A DNA stretch of 64,000 bases from Phyllobates terribilis (taxonomy: Eukaryota), in contig NW_027362761.1 in NCBI RefSeq assembly GCF_046119375.1, forward strand, positions 69,378,001 through 69,442,000, in the 5' to 3' direction. Of this stretch, positions 7,549 to 64,000 are shown one piece after another. Numbering within the stretch: position 1 is the first letter of the stretch; each line of letters starts with the position of its first letter. The translations under genes and the position numbers were made by a program. Under the pieces are notes generated by a model. That model saw nothing but the letters and a program-made list of their open reading frames with translations. It had not been told where the DNA came from and did not search any database.

Positions 7549-9045
7549 GACTACCTGGTAAAACCACCCATCTTGGGATATTCTGATTTCAATTTACCAT
7601 TTGTTCTACATTTTGATGCTTCTCAAGTTGGACTGGGAGCTGCCCTGTATCAGCATCAAGATGGAAAAATGAGAGTCATCGGTTACGGTTCTAGAACGTT
7701 GACAGACGCCGAGAAAAATTACCATCTACATTCCGGAAAATTGGAGTTCCTGGCATTGAAATGGGCTATCTGTGAATGATTTAGAGATTATCTCTACTAC
7801 AGCAAAGAGTTTGAGGTGTACACTGACAACAATGTCCTTACTACAGGCAAACTGAATGCAACGGGTCAGAGATGGGTCGCTGAACTAGCTGACTTCAATT
7901 TCAGCATCAAGTACAGGCCAGGAAAATGCAAAGTGGATGCTGACAGATTGTCAAGAATGCCACTAGAGCCTGAGGAGTTCATGCAAGAATGCTCGGAGGA
8001 AGTCAGTCTGGAAGCAATTGAGAGCAGTACCCAAGCAGTTCAAGCTTATCAGGGGGAAGACACACCATTGTGGTGTCCGTTGACAGTGGAAACCACCATA
8101 AAAGCGAGAGAACAAGATTACCCCTGGTCTATTCAACAACTACCAAAAGGGAAAATCGATAGAGCACAACGGGAAGATCAGATAATTGGTAGAATGCTAC
8201 TTTATGTGGACCAAAATTGGTTTCCAAGTAAACTGGAGAGAGACAATGAGTCACCAGCAGTATCTGTTTTAATTAAAGAATGGACGAAGCTCTACCTGAG
8301 TGAAGACGGTATCCTGTATCGTACAGGAGGACAAAATCGGCAATTGGTACTACCCAGAGTATTCCGTAGGTTGGTCTTCAAAGAACTCCATGAAAACATG
8401 GGACACCTGGGAGCGGAAAGGACAACAAATTTGATCCGTGAATGTTTCTTCCGGCCGTACATGCAGAGAGATATTGAGAGGTACGTGACCTGGGCACCAA
8501 TGGGCAACATCCAAACTACGTATCCGTTTGAGATGGTCTCAATAGACTTTCTACATCTCAAGACGTGCAAGGGTGGTTACGAATACATATTGGTGGTGAT
8601 GGACCATTTCACTCGATTTGCTCAAGCATTGAGGCTTGGGTTCCCTACGATGTTACACCACAACCAAGAGAATTTGAGAACCAGCTGTTTGCCAAGCTAG
8701 GAAAGTACTGTAGAATTCAGAGATCCCATACAACGCCCTATCACCCAGAGGGTAATGGACAAGTGGAACGTTTTAACCGGACATTATTGTCAATGTTGCG
8801 CACTTTAACAGCTGATAAGAATAAAGACTGGAAGAGTTATCTGTAAAAAGTGGTACATGCCTATAACTGTATAAAGAGTGATGTAACGGGTTACTCACCC
8901 TTTTTCCTATTGTATGGACGATCGCCAAGACTGCCAATCGACATCATGTTCAATACTCCGGTGTCAGAGACTTACAGAACATATCCGGAGTAGTCCATCG
9001 GAATTTACTGCTACCCTGTGATTATCTCCCACCACAACAAGACTT
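7549..9045 (+). pseudogene. Gypsy pol, RNase H and deleted integrase
   Basis: LPFVLHFDASQVGLGAALYQ and KLEFLALKWA (RNase H). HENMGHLG zinc finger lacks CxxC. Integrase motifs SIDFLHL and [12 protein letters not shown], then deletions. VHRNLLLPCDYLP near 8990-9030. Confidence 0.9.
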
Positions 9046-15474: not shown

Positions 15475-17547
15475 CAGCGGCGTACCGCGGTAGACCACGC
15501 CACTGCTATGGGGCCCGTGACCGCAGGGGGGCCCGTGAGCCGAGGGGCCCCAAGCAGCGGGGGGACCCAAGCAGCGTGGGGAAGAGTTGTATAGGTGAGT
15601 ATTGGTGGATAGTGGTGGGGGGAGGGAGGTTGCGGCAGAGCGGAGCACACACAGTAGTCGCTGAAGCAGCTATCACGTGTGCCCGCTGCTAAAGAGACAT
15701 GAATATTCATTCTCTTTAGTAGCGGGCACGGAGGAGCGCTGAGTCGCAGCTCCTGCTGACAGTGCCTGCTACTAAAGAGAATGCATATTCACGCTTCTCC
15801 ACGCCCATAGTCCTGGCGTGGAGAGGAGTGAATATGCCGGCAGCAGCAGCTCACCTCGGGATCCGAGAATGCGCGTTGCTCAGATGCCGACATGAGCTGC
15901 AGCAGACAGGACGCAGCGCTGGAGGAGAGGTGAGGAAGGAAGGTGAGTATTAGTGTTTATTTTTTTTTGTGTGTGCAGTGATTGGGGGATGAGCGGGCCA
16001 TATATACCAGGATTGTGGGTTTGGGGGGGCCACACATACCAAGATTGGGGAATTGAGGAGGCCACGCATACCAGGATTGGGGGATTGAGGAGGCCACGCA
16101 TACCAGGATTGGGGGATTGAGGAAGCCACACATACCAGAATTAGGTGATTGAGGAGGCCACACATACCAGTATTGGGGGATTGAGGAGGCCACACATACC
16201 AGGATTGGGGGATTGAGGAGGCCACACATACCAGGATTGGGGGATTGAGGAGACCACACATACCAGGATTGGGGGATTGAGGAGACCACACATACCAGGA
16301 TTGGGGGATTGAGGAGGCCACACATACCAGGATTGAGGGATTGAGGAGGCCACACATACCAGGATTGGGGGATTGAGGAGACCACACAGACCAGGATTGG
16401 GGGATTGAGGAGACCACACATACCAGGATTGGGGGATTGAGGAGGCCACACATACCAGGATTGAGGGATTGAGGAGGCCACACATACCAGGATTGGGGGA
16501 TTGAGAAGGCCACACATCCCAGGATTGGGGGATTGAGGAGACCACACATCCCAGGATTGGGGGATTGAGGAGGCCACACATATCAGGATTGGGGGATTGA
16601 AGAGGTCACACATACCAGGATTGGGCGATTGAGGAGGCCACACATACCAGGATTGGGGGATGAAGGGTGCCATACGTACACGTACCAGGATTGGGGGATG
16701 AGGGGTGCCATATGTACCAGGATTGGGAAATTTACTATTAGCTGCTGCATTTCCCACCCTAGGCTTACACTCGAGTCAATACGTTTTCCAGTTTTTTTGT
16801 AGTAAAATTAGGGGCCTCGGCTTATACTCGGGTTGGCTTATTTAAAATATACGGTATTTTAAAAATCAGTGAGTACGTGGTGCCCATAATACTGCAGGAC
16901 TGTGGGGTGCATTATACTATATGGGGGCTGCATTTTACCCTATGGGGTGTGTAATATACTGTATGGAGGACTGTGGGGAGTGAATTATATTCTATGGAGG
17001 ACCATGGGAAGTTCATTATACTATATGGAGGATTATGAGGGGGCGCATTATACTATATGGAGGATTATCAGTGGCGTATTATACTATATGGAAGGCTATG
17101 TGGGGCCTTTATAATATTTTGAGGGCTATGTGGGGGGCCATTATACTGTTTGGAGGGCTAGTGCAGGCCATTATACTGTATGTAAGCCCATTATAGTGTA
17201 TGGAGGGCTCTGCGGGGGTCACAGTTGGGGGATCATACTGTGTTGGTGTCACCATACTTTGCCTTAGGAGTTGAAGTGGGGTACTGTAGGGTCATTATAC
17301 TGTGCATGTGGAGGAATGCACCATGGGGGTATCATACTGTGTTTGGGGGGCACTTTTGTTGGCATCATACTTTATGGGGAAATGAAAGAGGGATCTTGGA
17401 CTTTAGCAGGAGGAAAATTACTATGTAAAGGCTGGAAAGTTGTGAGATCTGCTCTTCTGTGACACAGACAAATATTTCTTTATTTATTTGGGGGGGCCCA
17501 ATTAGAGCTTCTGCTATGGGGCCCCATGATTTCTATGTACGCCCCTG
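15475..17547 (+). mobile_element. Non-autonomous hAT element, 2073 bp, 8 bp TSD CCGGTACC
   Basis: TIRs CAGCGGCGTAC and GTACGCCCCTG (10/11 match). CCGGTACC at 15467-15474 and 17548-17555. Confidence 0.92.
15990..16725. repeat. 32 bp minisatellite, about 23 copies
   Basis: Unit ACCAGGATTGGGGGATTGAGGAGGCCACACAT. Produces the 32-aa periodic ORFs. Confidence 0.95.
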
Positions 17548-30907: not shown

Positions 30908-31392
30908 TTATAGAGGTAACGGAATGAGCTCACAACAAAAAAGAGGAAAAAAGAGCAGTGAAAGACCCATGAGTAGGGGAAATGTTAATGCAAGATTGGC
31001 CATGTACTGTATAAGAATTTATCACAAAAAGGTTCCGTTTATTAGGTTGCATGGGCTAGACTAGAGCAACTTGGTCAGACATGGTGTCTGACGGCTAAAT
31101 GGTACATGTAACGCATGTCTGACAATTCTCAGGTTGCGCTGCATTTTTATATGCATGGCTGCATTACTACATGGTCTGGTTACTTTTTGGATATTTGGAT
31201 CACATTACATATTACTATCCAAATTAACTGCATATTTCATGATAGTGATTGCAGCCCTGTATATATGCTGACACATTTTGTGATAAATTTTTATATCTGG
31301 CCAGTCTTGCATTAACATTTCCCCTACTCATTGGTCGTTCATTGTTCTTTTTTCCTCTTTTTTGTTGTGAGTTCACTCCGTTACCTCTATAA
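30908..31392. mobile_element. 485 bp element with about 120 bp terminal inverted repeats; superfamily unclear
   Basis: TTATAGAGGTAACGG...ATCACAAAA is mirrored by TTTTGTGAT...CCGTTACCTCTATAA. Confidence 0.8.
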
Positions 31393-32149
31393 CTGATATG
31401 TTGAAAGAACTTTCTTTCTGTGCTGTTGCTAATGAGCATGGCTCTTTTTAACATTTTAATGGATGTCTTTTGTAAAATAATAACTAGTGTTGAGCGAACA
31501 TGCTCGACACTGCTCGGTACTCGCCCGAGCATCACGCTACTCGGGATGTTCGGCGAGCACCGAGCATTTCCGGGTTACTCGGGCGGGAGCTCGGGTCTCC
31601 GCCCTGCATGTTTGGCACTCTTTACAGAGCCAATGAACATGCAGGGATTGCCAGCCAGTCACTGTAATGCTGCAGCCATGTTGGTTGTGGGCATTACAGT
31701 GATTGGCTGGCCGCACAGCGTCACCTCGAGTATTTAAAACCGGGCGCCGCCATCTTGGACACAATCGCTCCGGATTAGACAGTGTAGGGACAGCGCTGCT
31801 GATTTAGAGAGAGATATAAACTGCGAAATAGTTAGTGTAGGGTCTGTAAAGGCTGCCAGAACAAACAAACAGTCCTTTTCAGGACTAATATCCATCCCAG
31901 ATACCAGGCAGGCAGGCTGTATAGGAGACACAGTGGTTATACCAGCAAACGCTGCATTACAGTCCTGTGTGCTCCTGTTGCTGAAATTGCTGGACTTAGC
32001 ACCAGGTGTCGGGGGCCAGGAAAAATCCTTTTTTTTTCATCTAAACCCTCCTTTTTTTTCCTCCTTCACACTGTACAAATACCCGTCTTATTAACCTTTT
32101 GGTGTCCCCCCCCCCCCCCCCCAAAAAAAAAGCGTTTCTCTGATTTTTC

Positions 32150-32660
32150 AGATACAAATATAACTGTTGAAAATAGTCTGGTGTAGGCTAGAGAAACAGA
32201 AGTGGTGTTTTGCACATCCACAGTTCAAACCTCTGTATTATCCATTTTGGGTCATTTGTATCTAAAAAAAAAAAAAGCAGTTTGAGTGTGTCGCTCACTG
32301 TTCAGCCGCAAATATCTCTATTTAAAAAAGTGTGGTATACCCCAGTAAACAATAACTGTGGTTTTGCCATCCCACGGTAAAAAATCTCTATTATTCAGCT
32401 TTTGGTAGTTTTTTCCGTAAAGAAAAACAGTAGTGTCTCCTGACTGTTGTGACACAAAAATATATCTGTTGAAAATAGTCTTGTGTAGGCCCGACATCCC
32501 AGTGTGGTTTCGCAGTTCCACGGGTCAAATCGCTGTACTATCCAGTTTTGGGCCTTTGGTATCTAAAAAAAAAAGCAGTTTGAGTGTGTCGCTCACTGTT
32601 CAGCCGCAAATATCTCTATTTAAAAAAGTGTGGTATACCCCAGTAAACAACAACTGTGGT
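32150..32660. repeat. About 302 bp tandem duplication in the hAT 5' subterminal region
   Basis: TGTTGAAAATAGTC at 32165 and 32467. Near-identical blocks GCAGTTTGAGTGTGTCGCTCAC... Confidence 0.85.
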
Positions 32661-32744
32661 TTTCCTCTTCCACGGTTCTAATCTACTCTTTATTACCCTT
32701 TTTCCATTGATAGTGCAAGTGTAAGCTATTTTACTTCATTTACA

Positions 32745-35700
32745 ATGGGCAAGGCGCGTGGCAAGGGACGTGGAAGTGGACGTTCTGGTGATGGTTCGTG
32801 CAGAGGACGGGGCCGTGGCCAAGGTGAAAATGTGCCACAACCAACAGCCACATCTTCTCGCTCCCACTTCTTGACCGAATTACTAGGGAAGCACAGAACA
32901 ACACCAGTATTGAGAACTGATCAGTGTGAACAGGTTATTAATTGGATAGCAGATAATACTGCCAGTTACCTGGGCACAACCACCTCTGGTCTGTCTTCCA
33001 CACGGTCAACTCTTAGTAGCCGTGAGTCTCGACCACATACTCCTCCTCACCCTGATGCTCCTTCCTCCCACCATGCCGAGTGTCGTCAGACAGCAAGTGA
33101 TCCCACACTTGGACACTCTGAAGAGCTGTTCACTGGTCCATTTCCATATTTGGGCCCCTCGCCTGATACGCTTGAAGTGGTGGAAGAGGAGATCCCATGT
33201 TGCGATGCCCAAATATTTGAACAGTCACGGCCACAGGAAGTCGACGTTGGCAATCTGTCACAAGAGGTGGACGATGACGAGACACAATTGCCAGGAAGTG
33301 AGGAGGAGGATCGTGGTGCGCAAGTGGAAGAGGAGGAGGTGGTGGATGATCTAGTAACTGACCCAACGTGGAAGGAGGACATGCAGAGTGAGGCCAGCAG
33401 CACACAGGGGGAGGGAGGCAGAGTACCCCAACAGGCAGGAAGAAGCAGTGTGGTGGCTGCAGACAGAAGGCAGGCAACCGTTCCCCGTAACACCAACACG
33501 AGGGACGTTGCCAGTACAAGCGGTAGGTCTTCCAGAGTCTGGAATTTTTTTAAAGACTCTGCTGATAACCCCAAAAAGGCCATATGTTCCACCTGCCATG
33601 CCAGCATCAGCAGGGGTGACAAAACTACCAGCCTGACCACCACCAGCATGATCAGGCACATGGCAGCAAAGCACCCGACTTTGTGGGGCAAAACCCAGGG
33701 TCCACGACCAGTGTCAGCGGGTGTCACCACTGCTTCTTCCACTGTTGTGCGTGCAATAGAACCCCCTGTTGTGTGTGCAAGGCAATCCCCTGTCCATACT
33801 GCATGTAAAGATGCCCCCTCCTCTCAGTCTTCACTTGTTATGGCAGTTTCTCAAGAAACAGCATCAACGTCCACGTCCCACCGCAGCGTTCAATTGTCCA
33901 TATCCCAGACCTTTGAACGAAAGCAGAAATTCGCAGCTAACGCCCCACAGGCCACAGTCCTAAATTTGCACATTTCACGACTGCTTGCGTTGGAAATGCT
34001 GCCTTTTAGGCTGGTGGAGACGGAATTCTTCCGCAATCTTATGGCGGTGGCCGTCCCTCGGTACTCGGTCCCCAGCCGACACTATTTTGCCCGGTGTGCC
34101 ATCCCCGCACTACACAAGCACGTGTCCCAAAGCATCTGCCGTGCCCTCAACAACGCAGTTACTGGGAGAGTCCACCTGACAACGGACACGTGGACAAGTG
34201 CTTGTGGCCAGGGACGGTACATCTCTCTGACGGCACACTGGGTAAACATACTGGAAGCCGGGACCCAGTCAGAGTTGCCCTCACAGTGTACAGCTCCTGC
34301 GCATCCTCCTCCTCCTCCTCCTCCTCATGTTCAGCCTCCATCTCAGATATCACCACATCAGTTACAAGCTGGAAGCATTGCAGTACTGCCTCCGCCAAGC
34401 GGCAACAGGCTGTGCTGAAACTCATAAGCTTAGGTGAGAAACGCCGCCTGTCAGCTCATTTTCACAAGTCGGCTACAGCTTCCGCCGCCCTTGCTGTGTT
34501 GCAGCAGCGTTTGCAGCATCCGGCACACCGACTGGTGTGTGATGTCCCCACACGTTGGAACTCTACCCTCCACATGTTGCAAAGGATTTGTGAGCAGAAG
34601 AGAGCAGTTGTGGAGTACCAGCTGCAACAAGGCCGTCGATATTCAGGTCAGACTCCACGCATAAGACCTCAGGAGTGGACCTGGATGTCTGACATATGTA
34701 CCATCCTGACAAACTTTGAGGAGGCCACCAAGATGGTGAGTGGCGATGACGCCATCATTAGTGTCAGCATCCCACTTGTCTGTCTTTTGCAACGCTCTCT
34801 GCAGAGAATTAAAGAGGAGGCATTGCAGAGTATGATGAGATGGATCAAGAAGCCGTAGCGGGCGATTACACACAGCCCAGCCTCATCTCATCCCAACGTG
34901 CATTGGGGGACAATGAGGGAGAGGAGGAGGAGGAGGAGGAAGAACAGGAGCTGCTATCATGCGTTGCAGACGGTAGTACCTGTACAACTGTAATACCGTC
35001 GGTTCAGCGTGGGTGGCCTGAGGACAGGGGGGAGGAGGAGGAGGAGAGCATGGTCAGTCGTCATCTTGGTGAGTACACGGAAATCTTGCCCGTTACCAGT
35101 CTGGCACGCATGGCTGACTTTATGTTACGCTGCCTTAACCGTGACCCTCGCGTTGTCAAAATGTTGGGTGACAGTCATTACTGGTTGGTGACACTTGTAG
35201 ACCCCCGCTACAAGGAGAACTTTCACTCTCTTATTCCTGAGGTGGAGAGGTCTACAAAAATGGGGCAGTACCAGAAGGCCCTTGCTGCAGAACTCTTAAA
35301 AAAATTCCCATCTGAACACGCTAGCGGCAGAGGTCACAGTTTGTTGCCCAACCAAGGTGTACAGGCGAGTGAGATGCAACTCCAATCCAGCAGAGGCAGG
35401 GGAACACTGTCAACGTTCTGGGACAGTTTTCTGACACCCGCCCAGCTTACAGGCCCTGAGGCGCGGGGTACTCTCACAAGGAGTGGAAAGTTTCAAAAGA
35501 TGGTGAGGGAGTACCTTGCCGACCGTACCAGCGTCCTCCGTGATTCCTCTGTGCCTTTTAATTATTGGGTATCCAAGCTGGACACTTGGAATGAACTCGC
35601 TCTGTACGCCTTGGAGGTCCTGGCCTGCCCTGCCGCTAGCGTGTTATCGGAGCGTGTTTTTAGTGCCGCTGGGGGAATTATAACTGATAAGCGCACTCGC

Positions 35701-35802
35701 CTGTCAACTGACAATGCTGACAAGCTGACCCTTATCAAAATGAACAAGGGCTGGATTGGGCCAGACTTCTCATCACCACCAAATGACAGCAGAGTAACAT
35801 AA
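32745..35802 (+). pseudogene. hAT (BED-finger, ZBED-like) transposase with frameshifts and internal deletions
   Basis: BED finger VWNFF..CSTC..MIRHMAAKH. Motifs LTTDTWTS, CDVPTRWNSTLHML and hATC ACPAASVLSERVFSAAG. Spread over three ORFs in different frames. Confidence 0.93.
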
Positions 35803-35924
35803 AGTCAAATCCACTGTGTTATTTCGGGAGGGTATACGCTTACTCGTTTCGGCTGTTTTATCTTCTTCTCCTTATCCTCAGCCTCCACCACCACTATACC
35901 ACCAGGGTGCCAGCATTGCAAGTT

Positions 35925-36690
35925 CCTCCGTCCTTATTTTTGGCAGCTTTTGCTTGCAAGGCATAAGCAAATACTATGGGACACCCACTCCCCAATAATG
36001 AGACTTATGTTTGTAATATGCTGTACTGCATGGGTCTTGTAAGGGGCATTGCAAGTTGCTCCGTCCTAATTTTTGGCAGCTTTTGCTTGGAAAGCATAAG
36101 CAAATACTATGGGACACCCACTCCCCAATAATGGGACTTATGTTTGTAATATGCTGTACTGCATGGCTCTTGTAAGGGGCATTGCAAGTTGCTCCGTCCT
36201 AATTTTTGGCAGCTTTTGCTTGGAAAGCATAAGCAAATACTATGGGACACCCACTCCCCAATAATGGGACTTATGTTTGTAATATGCTGTACTGCATGGC
36301 TCTTGTAAGGGGCATTGCAAGTTGCTCCGTCCTAATTTTTGGCAGCTTTTGCTTGCAAGGCATAATCAAATACTATGGGACACCCACTCCCCAATAATGG
36401 GACTTATGTTTGTAATATGCTGTACTGCATGGCTCTTGTAAGGGGCATTGCAAGTTGCTCCGTCCTAATTTTTGGCAGCTTTTGCTTGCAAGGCATAAGC
36501 AAATACTATGGGACACCCACTCCCCAATAATGGGACTTATGTTTGTAATATGCTGTACTGCATGGCTCTTGTAAGGGGAGTTGCTAGGTCCTAATTTTTG
36601 GCAGCTTTTGCTTGCAAGGCATAAGGAAATACTATGGGACACCCACTCCCCAATAATGGGACTTATGTTTGTAATATGCTGTACTGCATG
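35925..36690. repeat. 133 bp tandem repeat, about 6 copies, in the hAT 3' region
   Basis: TACTATGGGACACCC at 35972, 36105, 36238, 36371, 36504 and 36630. Confidence 0.95.
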
Positions 36691-37705
36691 TGACGCGTCC
36701 CCTGGGCCGTGTGTACACGTGTGTGGGATACCTCTGGGGTCTGTAGTCTCCGTGGCGGTGACCCGGTCCCGTGGCTCAGGCTGGTCAAACCAGTGGCAGT
36801 CTTTCTTAGGTTTTGAGGTTAATTGTCCGACTGCGCCACCCGTGGATTGCAGTCAGGGAGTACCACCGCTGCGAGGCAGACCGCTTAGGCTGGTGTTGTG
36901 TGCGTAGCAGAGAATGGGATAACTCCCCACGGGAGGAGTATAGCCTCAGGGCAGTGAGTGTGGATGATGGGGGTGATGGTGCACGAGCGCAGCAGGAACG
37001 ACTCAGAGTCTTTGCAGTGCAGTTCAGGGTCTTTACTGATGATTATAAGGTAGACCCTCCCGGGAGTACTGGTTAGCATAAGAGGCCTGGTCAGTCTGTG
37101 AGCAAGCAGGAGTTCCCCTGGCCAGGTGGAGTTGTAGGCCTCCCCGTCTGTCTGCACTCTTCCTGGCTACCTTGCTGTAAGCGGGTAGAAGTAGCCCACG
37201 TCCCTGAGTGTACCGTGTAGTGCTCACCCGTATGGCTGGTGACTTGGGGCCTTCTGTTAGCCTCCGCTCCACGACGGCCGTGCTGGTCCCTTGCTTGTGA
37301 CTGAGCCTCCGGGCTTCTATGGCCAGAGGACCTGAAATCCCCTGCCGGCTGGTTTCTGCTGCTGGATATATAAGTCCTCACAGCCTCGGACTCCTGTGTC
37401 CAGTTCCTATTGTCTTCTGCCAGGGCGAGCTCTGCTCAGCTTCCAGCCCCTGGTCTTTAACTCCTAGCTCCTACAGAGCTCCTTGCTGTTACTTTCCCTT
37501 GCTCTCACTCTGACTCTGACTGTTCTCTGTTCTCTGACTCACTCAACCCCGCCCCAGATCCAGTTTATAAGGGCAGAATTCTCCCCTCCCAGGACTGGGG
37601 CAGGAGGATGTTGCATGTTTAAGGGATCCTGACCAGGAAACCTCCCACTTGCTCTCCGACGTAATATCTCTATTACTGTGGTGACCAGACCCCTGGGGTG
37701 CCACA
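36691..37705. mobile_element. Solo LTR (about 1015 bp), 4 bp TSD CATG
   Basis: CATG-TGACGCG...GTGCCACA-CATG. The flanks rejoin as the repeat unit GTACTGCATGGCTCTTG. Confidence 0.85.
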
Positions 37706-37989
37706 CATGGCTCTTGTAAGGGGCATTGCAGTTCCTCATAATTTTTGGAAAGCCTTCCATTCACTGCTTAGGCCAACAGTGCACAGGAGACCCAGTTGCT
37801 ATAAATGGAAAAAAAGGTTTAGTTAACGCCCCTTGACCTCCATGTAATTTCCAAGGGGCATTGGAGTGCCTCGAAATTTTTGGTAGGCATTGCACTCACT
37901 GTATGCCCTATAACTGTGTAGCCGAACCGCTCCTTTTGTTACAGAAACATATCCTACAAGACATATCTGGTTGACTGGCCTGATATTGA

Positions 37990-39600
37990 TGTGAATGGTC
38001 CCTGTTCCTCCTGCTCTTTCTCCTTTGCCACTACCTCATCCATCATTTATCACCTGAAGCTTTGTTTTAACGGGAGTCATAGAACTTGGATAGTAGCAGG
38101 AAAACATCCAGCAATCCTCGGAGGAGGTAGGATATGCGCCAAAACGCTGACCACCTCAGGCCTAGCCGCTACTACATACATGCGCTTGCATTACATCAAA
38201 ACAAAGCAGATGCTAACTTCTATCATCCTCATCATGCTCCTCCCCTTGACACTCTCAACTCCCCTGATGGAGAAGCCAGGGCCCACCGGAGGAGTCTGAT
38301 AGTCCGGTGGGCTCGGCCAATGCTGCCCTAAAGCAGGCCAGGCTAAGAAAAGTGTGGGAAAGGTTACCGGGACAAATAGGGGTGGCTGGGGACCGAGTAT
38401 GGACACCCGGCCACCCCCTGGAGGCTGGGGAGCAAGCGGGGACACCCGGCCACCAGGCGGCTGGGGACTGCGTATGGATACCAGGCCGCCGACACAGCCA
38501 TGGCGTGGTGGCCAGATTCCGCCTCCACATGCCTAAAAGGCCCAATTTAAAGTGCAAGCAAGCAAGCAGTATGGTATTGCAGCCTGGGGGTGGGTGGGTG
38601 GCAGGCTGCATACTTGCGCTTGCATTGCAAGGAATGGGAGAGGTACAATTGAACACTGCCCTGGGACAAGGACTTGAATGGGGATAGTTGCAAGTCTGCA
38701 ACGACAGGTGCAAGGTGGGAGGCATCTTCGCATGTACCATGAACAGGGGTTTGGCATGCACACACTACAGCGGAATAGGCTCTCCTTCCCACTAAATGCA
38801 CTGGGGAGGGCACAGGTAATGTTTTGGTATACGCGCTTAATCTTATGTATAAGGCACACCAGGACAAATAGGGGCAGCTGGGGACTGAGTATGGATACCT
38901 CGCTGCCGAAGCCGCCATGAGGTAGTGGCCAGCTTCGGCCTCCTCCAAATTAAAAGGCCCCATTTCAAGTGCAAGCTAGCAGTATGGAATTGCAGTCTGG
39001 GGGTGGGTGGGTGGCAGGCTGCACACTTACACTTGCATTAAAAGAAAACATAGCAGATGCTAACTTCTGTCATCCTCATCATGCTCCTCACCTTGGCACT
39101 CTCAACTCCACGATGGAGAAGTCAGGGCCCACCGGAGGAGTCTGGTTCTCTGGTGGGCTCGTCCAATGCTGCCTAAAGCGGGCCGGGCTAAGAAAAGTGT
39201 GTGGGGGGATGTTCCAAGGAGAAATAGGGGCGGCTGGGGACCGTTTATGGACACCCGGCTGCCCCCAGGTGGCTGGGGACCGTGTGTGGACACCCGGCCG
39301 CGGGGCGGCTGGGGACCGAGTATGGACACCCGGCCGCCAGGCAGCTGGGGACTGAGTATGGATTCCAGGCCGCCAACACAGCCATGACGTGGTGGCCAGA
39401 TTCCGCCTCCACATGCCTAAAAGGCCCAATTTCAAGTTCAAGCAAGCAAGCAGTATGGTATCGCAGCCTGGGGGTGGGTGGCAGGCTGCATACTTGCGCT
39501 TGCATTGCAAGGAATGGGGGAGGTACAATTGAACACTGCCCTGGGACTAGATCTTGCATGGGGATAGTTGCAAGTCTGCATCTTCTGATGCGGCAAGGAT
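37990..39600 (-). pseudogene. Three degenerate antisense copies of an internal hAT transposase segment
   Basis: The - strand has CCCCTGTTCATGGTACATGCGAAGATGCC vs CCCCTGTCCATACTGCATGTAAAGATGCC at 33787. Peptide SVQLYLSHSLQCKRKY..LLELEIGPFRHVE..YSVPS vs SVQLSISQTFERKQKF..LLALEMLPFRLVE..YSVPS. Confidence 0.85.
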
Positions 39601-40494
39601 CACTTATGATGGGCACACTTTTAGACAGTGACCTGGGAGTCAGAGATGCTTCCAGGGGTCTTCCCCATGCTGTTCCCATGTCTTTTCAGCACTTTATGCA
39701 TGTGTCACACAGCACATGGCCAGATAAGGTTGTAAAATGTTAAAATGACATTTCCCGGTGAATGCATTTGTCATAGTTGAAAGCAATACAAAAGTGCAAA
39801 AACGCATAAAAAATGCTACTTGTGAACATAGCCGAAGGTGTGGAGGAGTATTTTTGTTTTTGGTCATTTATTTTAACTTATACACAAGTCTTTTCCCTGG
39901 AAAGGATGTTCCTTAACATATTTCACAGGAAAAAAGTTTCACTTTCGTTTTTGAACTTTTTATTGTGAACCCGTAAAAGTGGCTTAATACCTCTGACCAC
40001 GTTGTTGACAGCAGTGACCTGGGGGTCAGAAATGCTTCCTGGGGCGATCCCCATGCTGTCCCCATGTCATTTGAGCACTGTCACTATCGTTTTGGGCACT
40101 TGTTAGGCTTTTAAAAGACTGCCGGGGGTGCCACCGCAAAAATGCTCGAATCTCCCATAGACTAACATTGGGCTCGTTGCTCGGGTCGAGCACCCGAGTA
40201 TAACGGCGAGCTCGGCCCGAGCTTCGAGCACCCGAGCATTTTAGTGCTCGCTCAACACTAATAATAACGTTTTGACTATTTTGTAGTATTTTCTGGCGAT
40301 TGTGACTCTTCTGTGGTTTTTGTAGGTATTATTGGTATTGAGTCTTGTGCCAGCTATGCACATGTTAGTTCAGAAATCTTTTTTCTGTTATTGTATCTAT
40401 GTAGTAAGCTCAGTTCTGGTACCATATTTATGCAGTAAACTTGTTTCTGTTCCCATATATATAGTAAGCTTGGTTCTGTTGATGTATCTATGTA

Positions 40495-42052
40495 CAGTCA
40501 AAAGTTTTGAGAATGACACCAAAATTATATTTTCACATGATCTGCAGGCCTCTGGTTTTTATTAGTGTTTGTCTGATGTTTATATCACATACAGAAATAT
40601 AATTGCAATCATATTATGAGTACCAATAGGTTATATTGACAGTTAGAATGAGTTAATGCAGCAAGTCAATATTTGCAGTGTTGCCCCTTCTTCTTCAAGA
40701 CCTCTGTAATTCTCCCTGGCATGCTCTCAATCAACTTTTGGACCAAATCCTGACTGATAGCAGTCCATTCTTGCATAATCAATGCTTGCATTTTGCCAGA
40801 ATTTGTTGGTTTTTGTTTGTCCACCCGTCTCTTGATGATTGACCACAAGTTCTCAATGGGATTAAGATCTGGGGAGTTTCCAGGCCATGGACCCAAAATC
40901 TCTATGTTTTGTTCCATGAGCCATTTAGTTATCACCTTTGCTTTATGGCAAGGTGCTCCATCATGCTGGAAAAGGCATTGTTGGGCGCCAAACTGCTCTT
41001 GGACGGTTGGGAGAAGTTGCTCTTGGAGGACATTCTGGTACCATTCTTTATTCATGGCTGTGTTTTTAGGCAAGACTGTGAGTGAGCCGATTCCCTTGGC
41101 TGAGAAGCAACCCCACACATGAATGGTTTCAGGATGCTTTACAGTTGGCATGAGACAAGACTGGTGGTAGCGCTCACCTCTTCTTCTCCGAATAAGCTGT
41201 TTTCCAGATGTCCCAAACAATCGAAAAGGGGATTCATCAGAGAAAATGCCCCAGTCCTGAGCAGTCCACTCCCTGTACCTTTTTCAGAATATCAGTCGGT
41301 CCCTGATGTTTTTTCTGGAGAGAAGTGGCTTCTTTGCTGCCCTCCTTGAAACCAGCCCTTGCTCAAAGAGTCTCCGCCTCACAGTGCGTGCAGAAGCACT
41401 CACACCAGCCTGCTGCCATTCCTGAGCAAGCTCGGCACTGCTGGTAGTCCGATCCCGCAGCTGAAACAGTTTTAAGATACAGTCCTGGCGCTTGCTGGTC
41501 TTTCTTGGGCGCCCTGGAGCCTTTTTGACAACAATGGAAGCTCTCTCCTTGAAGTTCTTGATGATGCGATAGATTGTTGACTGAGGTGCAATCTTTGTAG
41601 CTGCGATACTCTTCCCTGTTAGGCCATTTTTGTGCAGTGCAATGATGGCTGCACGTGTTTCTTTAGAGATAACCATGGTTAACTGAAGAGAAACAATGAT
41701 ACCAAGAACCAGCCTCCTTTTAAAGTGTCCAGTGATGTCATTCTTACTTAATCATGACTGATTGATCGCCAGCCCTGTCCTCATCAACACCCACGCCTGT
41801 GTTAATGGATCAATCACTAAAACGATGTTAGCTGCTCCTTTTAAGGCCGGACTGCAATGATGTTGAAATGTGTTTTGGGGGTTAAAGTTCATTTTCTGGG
41901 CAAATATTGACTTTGCAAGTACAGTAATTGCTGTTAAGCTGATCACTCTTTGACATTCAGGAGTATATGCAAATTGCCATTACAAAAAATGAAGCAGTAA
42001 ACTTTGGAAAAATTACTATTTGTCTCATTCTCAATACTTTTGGCCATGACTG
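40495..42052 (-). mobile_element. Near-intact Tc1-like transposon, DD35E (Traveler-type), TA TSD
   Basis: TIR CAGTCATGGCCAAAAGTATTGAGAATGA, with 6 bp lost in the copy at 40495. TA on both flanks. Length 1558 bp. Confidence 0.93.
40666..41676 (-). pseudogene. DD35E transposase, 336 codons, one premature TGA
   Basis: ORFs 41284-41676 and 40666-41220 are in the same frame. FSDE, QHD and PIE motifs with 35 residues between D and E. Confidence 0.93.
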
Positions 42053-62716: not shown

Positions 62717-64000
62717 TAGTGATGAGCGAGCACTAAAATGCTCAAGTGCTCGGCACTCGAATCGAGCTGGTCGGACGCTCTGACCCGCTTGACTCGAGTA
62801 CCGAGTATAATGGAAGTCAATGGGAAACCCGAGCCTTTTACAGGCAGACCCTAGAAGGAGGACGGGTGTGGTGGTGGAGGGGGGGGGGGGGCAGAAATCA
62901 ACCGCGTGGCCCAGTTGAACAGATGTAAATTGAAAATAAATATTCACTACTCCCCACGCCCACCTCTCGGCGTCTGTGAAGACTTTTACTATCATTGGCC
63001 CAGCGATGAGAGGTGGACAAGGGGAGCAGTGAATATCGATTTTCAATTTACATCTGATTAACTGGGCAGTGAGCGGCGCTCACTCCTCCGGTGCGAACAG
63101 TAAAAAAAAAAAAAAAAACACACACAACGACATGGGGCCCCCCCATTTTTAATAATCAGCTAAGGGAAAGCAGACAATTCTGGTGCTTAGCCTCGGCTCT
63201 TCCCGATTGCAATGGTGCGTTGGCAATCGAGGTAATATTTTTGGGATTGATGTCAGCAGCTGGCGCTGACATCAAGCCCAGTGGTTAGTAATGGAGAGGC
63301 GTCTGTCAGACACCCCCATTACTTTTTATTTTTAGGCTGGTAAGGGCCCAATAACCAATATTAATATCAGCTCCCAGCTGTCTGCTTTGCCTTTGCTGGT
63401 TATAAAAAATGGGGGACCCTAAAAAAAAATGACATGGAGTCCTCCCCATTTTTGATAACCAGCAAAGGCAAAGCAGACAGCTGTGAGCTGATATTAATAG
63501 GCTGGGAAGGTCCATGGATATCGGGCCCTTCTCAGCCTATTAATATCAGTCCTCAGCTGTCTGCTTTCTCTTAGCTGGTTATTAAATAAAAGGGGGGACC
63601 CCACATCGTTTTATTTATTTATTTCATCTGTCAGCACAGTAGAAGTGAGAGCCGCACGCTGCCCAATTAATCAGATGTAAATTGAAAATGAGTATTCACT
63701 GCTCCCCACGCCCACCGCTCCTTGCCGGGCCAGTGATAGTAAAAATTTTCACAGGCGCCGAGAGGCGGGAGGAAAATGTGGCGAGCATCGCACCACCGGG
63801 TCTTCTATAAGAAGAATCTATTGCAGCCGGCCAATCACAGTAATGCCAGTAGCCAACATGGCTACGGCATTACTGTGTATGGCATGCAAAATGGCATTAC
63901 TGAGTATGGCATGCAAAAACTCACGTTTATTGGCTGTCTAACAGCCGCAAAACATGCAGGACGAGGACTCTAGCATGGAGCTCGAGCACCCTGATGCTCG
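62717..64000 (-). mobile_element. Non-autonomous relative of the 31485-40260 hAT element, running off the window end
   Basis: TAGTGATGAGCGAGCACTAAAATGCTC matches the reverse complement of 40234-40260. 63830-64000 resembles the reverse complement of 31560-31710. Palindromic interior. Confidence 0.88.

What the first reader, a model, noticed from the sequence alone, without database searches (positions are those of the whole stretch)
37990..39600. hAT element carries three antisense degenerate copies of its own transposase segment
Inside the TIR/TSD-bounded element, the - strand holds three tandem diverged copies of the region at about 33787-34270 (post-BED linker, VQLS..LLALEM.PF..YSVPS..YF..WTS). 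DNA-level matches are clear, for example CTATTTGTCCTGGTGTGCC vs CTATTTTGCCCGGTGTGCC, and GTTCAATTGT is shared. No separate TIRs or TSD bound this block, so it does not look like an ordinary nested insertion. A read-through transcript could fold back, or an inward transcript from the right end would be antisense to the transposase. This would be a built-in silencing module, analogous to Mu killer. The 38000-38200 part (HILPPPRIAG) may preserve sequence that was deleted from the sense ORF. Novelty cannot be verified here.
Basis: partly seen in the sequence, partly recalled or inferred. Interest (0 to 1): 0.72.

Follow-up and report, generated by a model that had tools for sequence, protein, structure and literature searches.

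The report
Backwards transposase relic in frog hAT
A very abundant poison-frog "cut-and-paste" (hAT) jumping gene really does carry backwards, tandemly repeated scraps of a transposase gene near its 3' end in essentially all its copies, but they look like an old, neutrally decaying rearrangement and not a working self-silencing device.

Summary
Window 31485-40260 is one hAT element with 13-nt exact TIRs and a perfect 8-bp TSD. The minus strand of 38172-39580 holds three diverged tandem units homologous to sense transposase codons about 340-500 (33763-34270). They are 66-78% identical at DNA level (tblastn E 1e-15, 7e-6, 6e-5). No TIR relics bound the block.

The block is not locus-specific. 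A paralogue, a roughly 20%-diverged sister subfamily, and about 220,000 Logan contigs from a DNA run all carry it at the same place and orientation. So do two related organisms. Unit number varies between copies.

Trees place all antisense units in one clade within the host's broad hAT lineage, arising before the subfamily split. The "HILPPPRIAG" piece (37912-38185) instead comes from a different hAT clade. The sister subfamily's tail also holds a sense-oriented CDS scrap, so the 3' region is a patchwork.

Evidence against a silencing module:
- The longest exact sense/antisense match is 17 nt.
- The units carry stops, frameshifts and CpG decay.
- Sense and antisense show no co-evolution.

RNA and small-RNA evidence could not be obtained. 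The scan found the same family feature in another window of this genome (s1-241531), with the same verdict. My reading is an old rearrangement relic that hitch-hikes with the element.

The parts
31485..40260 (+). Host hAT element (8776 bp). TIRs at 31485-31497 and 40248-40260. TSD ATAATAAC at 31477-31484 and 40261-40268.
   Evidence: TIR/TSD scan, end alignment, exact TIR matches.
32745..35802 (+). Sense transposase gene, defective in this copy. Three overlapping ORF pieces: 32745-34418, 34094-34858, 34840-35802. Carries zf-BED and the hAT dimerisation domain. Relative to paralogue L001 it has deletions of about 50 bp (51-57 bp) and about 230 bp.
   Evidence: ORFs. Pfam PF02892 at 2.3e-9 and PF05699 at 7.3e-11. 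Deletions by comparison with L001 and loose ends at 34442.
33763..34270 (+). Sense segment (post-BED linker to the start of the catalytic core, aa about 340-508) that the antisense units are homologous to.
35780..36725 (+). 133-bp tandem array downstream of the transposase stop. Two further degenerate units lie at 37703-37900.
   Evidence: Also present in L001 and L003.
36691..37717 (.). About 1 kb that interrupts the 133-bp array in this copy only. It is absent at this place in L001. Its first approximately 300 bp recur inside the CDS of another element (L003 428-729).
   Evidence: Loose ends at 36797, 36983 and 37718.
37912..38185 (-). Fragment F: two joined pieces of a transposase gene from a different hAT clade (P0011-like). 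They cover the 'VVAA..HILPPPRIAG' piece and the 'EEQGPFT' piece. Present in subfamily A and not found in subfamily B.
   Evidence: tblastn. Clade-specific insertion. 86% over 71 nt and 74% over 163 nt to the P0011 gene, alignment scores 92 and 111 vs 42 or less for host-clade genes. 95% identical in L001. No match in the L003a tail.
38172..38775 (-). Antisense unit c1 (sense aa about 342 to the 'AHW' region). Includes 36-bp minisatellite units at 38381-38491.
38776..39047 (-). Antisense unit c2 (shorter). Orthologous to L001 unit a1.
   Evidence: c2+a1 support 99/97.
39019..39580 (-). Antisense unit c3, 83% identical to c1. Includes four 36-bp minisatellite units at 39229-39375.
39601..40260 (+). 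Right subterminal region with short [T/G][A/G]CTCGG-type repeats near the TIR and an internal 68-nt direct repeat (39626-39693 / 40012-40079).

Best explanation
The block is a fossil of an old internal rearrangement and does no job today.

How it arose (inferred): in the ancestor of two subfamilies of a very abundant dendrobatid hAT family, a piece of a transposase gene from the host's own broad lineage was placed backwards in the 3' non-coding region. The piece covered roughly codons 340-530. The most likely routes are template switching or abortive gap repair after excision, or a nested copy whose ends were later lost.

What happened next: because the block lies between the TIRs, every later transposition copied it. 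It was then tandemly amplified, separately in each subfamily, and acquired a 36-bp minisatellite. Subfamily A additionally picked up a scrap of a different hAT clade next to it. Since then the block has decayed at the neutral rate.

What is shown: the anatomy, the family-wide presence, the phylogenetic placement and the decay.

What is inferred: the rearrangement mechanism and the absence of function.
For: (1) Family-wide, same place and orientation.
- Paralogue L001 (92-95% identical) and sister subfamily B (L003 1-8188, sense 78-85% identical) both have sense CDS, then the 133-bp repeat, then the antisense units, then the right TIR.
- In DNA run X2, 223,540 contigs were laid. Summed depth over the block is 1.2-1.8M vs 1.6-3.7M over the CDS. 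Organisms B and C also hold it.

(2) One origin before the A/B split.
- Antisense units are monophyletic, 100/99 in the DNA tree and 100/98 in the protein tree.
- An origin after the A/B split is rejected (AU p = 0.013).

(3) Neutral decay.
- Antisense branches are about 1.5-2x longer than sense branches.
- Stops and frameshifts occur in every unit.
- Minisatellite units differ from their consensus by 0-7 of 36 positions, including CpG>TpG changes.
- Unit number is polymorphic, with joints skipping 418, 456 or 869 nt.

(4) Patchwork.
- Fragment F comes from a different clade.
- Subfamily B's tail also has a sense-oriented CDS scrap at L003 5010-5287.

(5) No maintenance of complementarity.
- The longest exact complement is 17 nt and no 20-mers are shared.
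- The A antisense is closer to the B sense (73%) than to the A sense (68%).

(6) Precedent. Filler DNA and rearranged internals are typical of hAT derivatives such as Ds2 and Ds-like elements (PMC3260210).
Against: - Retention through the diversification of two subfamilies, with independent tandem amplification in each, is also what a useful module would show. It is equally expected for any neutral passenger between the TIRs.
- An imperfect sense/antisense RNA duplex is thermodynamically far better than shuffled controls (dG -314 vs -209 kcal/mol, z = -12).
- This copy has no AATAAA on the + strand between the transposase stop and the right end, so a sense transcript may well run into the block.
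- No stranded RNA or small-RNA data could be examined.
- Junction microhomologies that would show gap repair were not analysed.
Confidence: 0.8

Rival explanations
1. Built-in self-silencing or self-limiting module. Read-through sense transcripts fold back on the antisense units, or an inward transcript from the right end is antisense to the transposase mRNA. Either route would feed dsRNA, siRNA, piRNA or ADAR pathways, as with Mu killer, Ac inverted duplications or the Tam3 Stabiliser loci.
For: - The block is carried by the whole family and a sister subfamily at the same place and orientation.
- The predicted imperfect duplex is much more stable than shuffled controls.
- No canonical poly(A) signal lies between the stop codon and the block.
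- Locus-level inverted duplications of hAT and Mutator sequences do silence their families (PMC3440606; bioRxiv 10.1101/2020.01.07.897926; bioRxiv 10.1101/2024.06.24.600476).
Against: - Sense and antisense are 66-78% identical. The longest perfect complement is 17 nt, the longest helix including G-U is 18 bp, and there are no 20-mers.
- There is no sense/antisense co-evolution within subfamilies.
- Decay is neutral-looking and unit number varies.
- Neighbouring scraps come from a foreign clade and, in subfamily B, lie in sense orientation.
- The family is extremely abundant, so it has evidently not been restrained.
- The related elements examined lack any such block. Those are P0001 in Anomaloglossus, the P0011 gene, and P0006 in Leptodactylus.
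Confidence: 0.07
2. Ordinary nested insertion. A second, complete hAT element inserted backwards into the 3' region of the ancestor and later lost both ends and most of its gene. On this view the block is a foreign element's corpse and not a rearranged copy of the host's own gene.
For: - On the minus strand the pieces are in gene order: units (aa about 340-530), then F (aa about 246-268 and 517-560 of P0011).
- F clearly derives from another clade.
- AU tests cannot reject placing the units outside the host A+B+P0001 group (p = 0.078 and 0.16).
- The protein tree puts them weakly with P0001 (81/79).
Against: - No TIR relic with 3 or fewer mismatches lies anywhere inside the element.
- L001 shows that the units and F each carry their own version of the '..LP.PRIAG' region. 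They are therefore two separate fragments and not one collinear gene.
- The ML DNA tree puts the units sister to the host A+B sense genes (80/83).
Confidence: 0.1
3. Cis-acting role at the DNA level. The 36-bp minisatellite contains CCGAGTA, the reverse complement of TACTCGG. TACTCGG is one of the short subterminal repeats near both TIRs that probably bind transposase. The array could then act as extra transposase-binding sites for the right end.
For: - [T/G][A/G]CTCGG-type motifs are the most over-represented 6-7-mers in the terminal 300 bp of both ends.
- The minisatellite carries the motif in the orientation expected for the right end.
- A 35-nt unit is identical between subfamilies A and B.
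Against: - Only 3 of 8 units in this copy keep the motif. The others carry CTGAGTA, CTGCGTA, CCGTTTA, CCGTGTG or GCAAGCG.
- The motif is there because it encodes the conserved 'YSVPS' codons of the source gene.
- The block lies 660-2100 bp from the end, further in than hAT subterminal sites usually extend (general knowledge of Ac/Ds).
- With about 24 unit pairs compared, one identical pair is not surprising.
Confidence: 0.03

Closest known systems
Ds2 / Ds-like rearranged hAT elements with filler DNA (maize Ac/Ds; abortive gap repair)
   Same: A hAT element whose interior holds scrambled or foreign 'filler' pieces, including transposase-gene fragments. The filler is carried passively between intact ends and decays (PMC3260210).
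   Different: - Here the rearranged pieces sit in an otherwise full-length, autonomous-type element and do not replace the gene.
- The arrangement became fixed in a family with an enormous copy number and in its sister subfamily.
- The scraps were then tandemly amplified.
Mu killer (maize) and Ac inverted duplications made by alternative transposition
   Same: An inverted partial copy of a transposase gene lies in cis with sequence that can be transcribed. It can in principle form a hairpin RNA (PMC3440606; bioRxiv 10.1101/2020.01.07.897926).
   Different: - Those are single, recent, near-identical inverted duplications at one locus. They act in trans through siRNAs and were shown genetically to silence.
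- Here the inverted copy is in every element, is 22-34% diverged from the sense gene, has no shared 20-mer, and has no RNA evidence.
Tam3 Stabiliser loci (OSt, NSt) of Antirrhinum
   Same: Rearranged or head-to-head hAT copies that give rise to small RNAs and repress the family (bioRxiv 10.1101/2024.06.24.600476).
   Different: - They are specific host loci involving the 5' terminal region with transposase-binding motifs.
- They are not an internal CDS relic present in all copies.
Double Ds (one Ds inserted backwards into another)
   Same: hAT sequence in inverted orientation inside a hAT element (general knowledge; mentioned in PMC3260210).
   Different: - Double Ds keeps both sets of ends and therefore breaks chromosomes.
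- Here no internal TIRs remain.

Membership tests
hAT superfamily transposon (host element) | 8-bp target-site duplication | tested here: met
   ATAATAAC on both sides, 8/8.
hAT superfamily transposon (host element) | Short terminal inverted repeats | tested here: met
   13 nt exact, 13/14 match, at 31485 and 40260.
hAT superfamily transposon (host element) | Transposase with BED zinc finger, RNase-H-like core and C-terminal hAT dimerisation domain | tested here: met
   - PF02892 and PF05699 in the window ORFs.
- Full-length relatives also carry PF27039.
- This copy's core is broken by deletions.
Mu killer-type hairpin silencer | Inverted duplicate nearly identical to the target transposase sequence, giving small RNAs that match it | tested here: not met
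   66-78% identity, longest exact complement 17 nt, no 20-mers.
Mu killer-type hairpin silencer | Transcription through the inverted repeat producing hairpin RNA and siRNAs | not testable with these tools
   - Only Logan contigs were available, with no strand information.
- The one 'RNA?' run is a guess.
Mu killer-type hairpin silencer | A distinct locus acting in trans on otherwise normal elements | tested here: not met
   The block is part of the element in all copies examined and in most contigs.
Nested hAT / double-Ds structure | Inner element with its own TIRs and TSD | tested here: not met
   No TIR-like match with 3 or fewer mismatches between 31498 and 40247.
Rearranged hAT with filler DNA (Ds2-like, gap-repair products) | Interior made of non-collinear fragments of transposon or other DNA, in either orientation, between intact ends | tested here: met
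   - Antisense units from the host lineage, plus an antisense scrap from another clade.
- A sense scrap in subfamily B.
Rearranged hAT with filler DNA (Ds2-like, gap-repair products) | Microhomology or short filler at the fragment junctions | not tested
   The junctions are old and diverged. Family consensus sequences would be needed.

The most novel reading that the evidence does not exclude
The antisense array is a genuine self-limiting device of an autonomous vertebrate DNA transposon. Sense transcripts lack a poly(A) signal before the block and run into it. They form a long imperfect hairpin with the transposase coding region. That hairpin is processed or edited (Dicer, piRNA entry or ADAR), damping transposase output in every copy. 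Such damping could have let the family reach a huge copy number without killing its host.
Probability: 0.06. Interest if true: 0.75.

Novelty: new member of a known kind. Interest (0 to 1): 0.3.

Why it matters
If the block were functional, it would be the first transposon-encoded, family-wide antisense self-regulator in a vertebrate DNA transposon. As it stands, it is mainly useful in three ways:
- It is a diagnostic structural marker for this very abundant dendrobatid hAT family and its sister subfamily.
- It shows how an internal rearrangement can be fixed in an autonomous-type element and then spread genome-wide.
- It is a caution for annotation, because the backwards CDS scraps can be mis-called as separate hAT fragments or genes.

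Tried and rejected
- **Locus-specific artefact:** rejected. Two other copies, a sister subfamily and about 220,000 contigs carry the block.
- **Nested element with its own ends:** no internal TIR relics were found.
- **One collinear backwards gene (units plus F):** rejected. L001 shows the units and F each have their own '..LP.PRIAG' region, and F is P0011-like.
- **Selection on the 36-bp minisatellite or TACTCGG motif:** the units decay, and only 3 of 8 keep the motif.
- **Recent self-copy:** an origin after the A/B split is rejected (AU p = 0.013).
- **A general trait of related frog hATs:** no antisense pieces lie within 10 kb downstream of the P0001, P0011 or P0006 genes.
- **Pfam on the antisense ORFs:** no hits.
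- **Promoter and terminator scan:** not used, because the tool models bacterial signals.
- **RNA evidence:** all runs offered were Logan contigs, and the single 'RNA?' run is a guess. Nothing can be said about transcription or strand.

Full report
**What is there**

The window holds no N. A scan for TIR plus TSD finds one clear hAT element at 31485-40260. It has 13-nt exact terminal inverted repeats (13/14 match) and a perfect 8-bp duplication, ATAATAAC.

Its sense gene lies at 32745-35802 in three overlapping ORF pieces. It carries a BED finger (PF02892, 2.3e-9) and the hAT dimerisation domain (PF05699, 7.3e-11). Downstream, in order, come:
- a 133-bp tandem array (35780-36725, with two more degenerate units at 37703-37900);
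- a copy-specific interruption of about 1 kb (36691-37717);
- the block in question;
- the right subterminal region.

**The observation**

The minus strand of the block is homologous to the sense segment 33763-34270.
- blastn gives 65.7% over 265 nt (E 1e-12), 69.8% over 106 nt and 77% over 53 nt.
- tblastn of the sense ORF gives three minus-strand hits: 38768->38457 (aa 342-445, E 1e-15), 38975->38850 (E 7e-6) and 39514->39344 (E 6e-5).
- The same-strand control shares no 12-mer.

The units form a tandem array. Unit c1 (38172-38775) and c3 (39019-39580) are 83% alike, and a shorter c2 (38776-39047) lies between them. A 36-bp minisatellite derived from the 'YSVPS' codons sits inside c1 and c3. 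No TIR-like sequence with 3 or fewer mismatches lies inside the element.

**Which organism and family**

The nearest proteins are 'ZBED4/6-like' predictions from dendrobatid poison frogs. A Phyllobates terribilis protein is 94% identical, and there is a full-length 905-aa relative in Anomaloglossus. The window is therefore most likely from a Phyllobates-like dendrobatid. This is inferred from 92-97% identical paralogues in GCA_046119375.1. hAT elements make up 3-5% of such genomes (PMC11152451, PMC12208295).

**Is the block family-wide? Yes.**

- Locus L001 is a paralogue with 92-95% identity. It has the same tail: L001 14168-14646 matches window 37718-38195 at 95%, 14911-16200 matches 38776-40123 at 87%, and the right TIR is at 16859. 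Its antisense unit a1 is the best preserved, with about 140 aa (139-142 in two tblastn runs) in one frame and E 5e-28 to 5e-32.
- L003 1-8188 is a sister subfamily B whose sense gene is 78-85% identical. It has the same architecture, with three antisense units (about 7498->7087, 6595->6219, 6249->6010) and the right end at 8188.
- In DNA run X2, 223,540 Logan contigs lie on 33700-39650 at 88% identity or more. Summed depth over the block is 1.2-1.8 million vs 1.6-3.7 million over the CDS. Runs labelled as two other organisms also cover every bin. Joints that skip 418, 456 or 869 nt show that unit number varies between copies. The tool itself warns that contig depth is only a rough guide.
- More distant relatives show no antisense pieces within 10 kb downstream. 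These are the P0001 gene in Anomaloglossus, the P0011 gene in P. terribilis and P0006 in Leptodactylus.

**Origin of the units**

A DNA ML tree (15 rows, 462 columns) makes all antisense units one clade (100/99). That clade is sister to the host A+B sense genes (80/83) when rooted on P0011. Within it the subfamily-B units and subfamily-A units form separate groups, so the tandem amplification happened, or was homogenised, separately in each subfamily.

AU tests give three results:
- An origin after the A/B split is rejected (p = 0.013).
- Placement outside A+B+P0001 is not rejected (p = 0.078).
- Placement outside clade I is not rejected (p = 0.16).

A 28-row protein tree again gives a monophyletic antisense clade (100/98). 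It sits in the polytomy of the host's clade I, weakly with P0001 (81/79), and not in the P0011 clade. 'Its own transposase' is therefore the best estimate but is not secure. 'A transposase of the host's broad lineage, captured before the subfamilies split' is secure.

**The HILPPPRIAG part**

The minus strand of 37912-38185 (fragment F) encodes two joined pieces, '..VVAA..HILPPPRIAG..' and '..EEQGPFT..'. Both are of the P0011/P0007/P0012 type.
- F is 86% identical over 71 nt and 74% over 163 nt to the P0011 gene. Alignment scores are 92 and 111, vs 42 or less for any host-clade gene.
- F shares an insertion found only in that clade.
- In L001, unit a1 carries its own host-type version of this region and F follows it. 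They are therefore separate fragments.
- F is absent from subfamily B.

The window's sense ORF does lack this motif through a roughly 50-bp (51-57 bp) copy-specific deletion, and L001 keeps it. What lies backwards at 38100-38185 is nevertheless not the host's lost sequence. Subfamily B's tail also holds a sense-oriented CDS scrap (L003 5010-5287, aa 332-413 of P0001). The 3' region is a patchwork of transposase scraps in both orientations.

**Does it look functional?**

Against function:
- The longest exact sense/antisense complement is 17 nt, within the YSVPS codons. No 20-mers are shared with the window's, L001's or L003's sense genes. The longest uninterrupted helix including G-U is 18 bp.
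- Every unit carries stops and frameshifts.
- The minisatellite units differ from their consensus by 0-7 of 36 positions, with CpG>TpG changes.
- Antisense branches are about 1.5-2x longer than sense branches.
- Subfamily A's unit a1 is closer to subfamily B's sense gene (73%) than to A's own (68%). Complementarity is therefore not being maintained.

For function:
- The imperfect duplex is much more stable than shuffled controls (z = -9 to -12).
- There is no AATAAA between the stop codon and the right end on the + strand.
- The block has been retained in two subfamilies.

All three points are also expected for a homologous but neutral passenger lying between the TIRs.

**Mechanism proposed**

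A backwards scrap of a transposase gene entered the 3' non-coding region of the ancestral element. This probably happened through template switching during gap repair after excision, the process thought to generate Ds-type internal rearrangements and filler (PMC3260210; general knowledge of abortive gap repair). A nested copy that later lost its ends is the alternative. Being between the TIRs, the scrap was copied with every transposition. Slippage or unequal exchange amplified it, and it has decayed neutrally since.

**Comparison with known systems**

The block works like, and belongs with, rearranged hAT elements carrying filler. It resembles Mu killer, Ac inverted duplications and the Tam3 Stabiliser loci only in geometry (PMC3440606; bioRxiv 10.1101/2020.01.07.897926; 10.1101/2024.06.24.600476). 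Those are single, recent, near-identical loci with demonstrated small RNAs.

**Earlier scan note**

The same family feature was reported from another window of this genome (s1-241531), with the same conclusion. I reached my reading before seeing it and tested it independently here. New here are the foreign-clade origin of F, the sense scrap in subfamily B, the separate amplification per subfamily, and the co-evolution test.

**Limits**

- All sequencing runs were Logan contigs without strand information, and the single 'RNA?' run is a guess. Transcription and small RNAs remain untested.

Noticed in passing
window 36691-37717: About 1 kb that interrupts the 133-bp array in this copy only. Its first approximately 300 bp are 79% identical to an insertion inside the transposase CDS of another element (L003 428-729), so it is probably a separate mobile repeat. 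It has the highest depth of the laid stretch in the 'RNA?' run X14.
   Followed up: partly
window 62717-64000: A TIR with one mismatch lies at 62717. It is followed by sequence 73% identical to the reversed right end of the hAT element. Sequence resembling the left subterminal region lies at 63822-63889. This is probably a short (about 1.3 kb) non-autonomous relative in reverse orientation that runs off the window end.
   Followed up: partly
window 40666-41220 (-): A Tc1/mariner-type transposase remnant (184-aa ORF, PF13358 DDE_3, E 2.8e-12) lies about 400 bp beyond the hAT right end.
   Followed up: partly
window 30908-31392: A 95-nt inverted repeat (93% complementary, 295 nt apart) lies just upstream of the hAT element, with MITE-like geometry.
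   Followed up: no
window 32145-32680: Tandem repeats of about 150 bp lie in the 5' non-coding region of the hAT element, between the left end and the transposase ATG. Repeat number differs in paralogue L003b.
   Followed up: no
L003 16273-22547: A third copy of the window's family (95-97% identical) keeps a 700-aa open frame through the C-terminal two thirds of the transposase. Its 133-bp array is longer than the window's. The family may be young enough to include near-intact copies.
   Followed up: partly
L003 5010-5287: The sister subfamily's 3' tail holds a sense-oriented duplicate of transposase codons about 332-413, in addition to its antisense units.
   Followed up: partly
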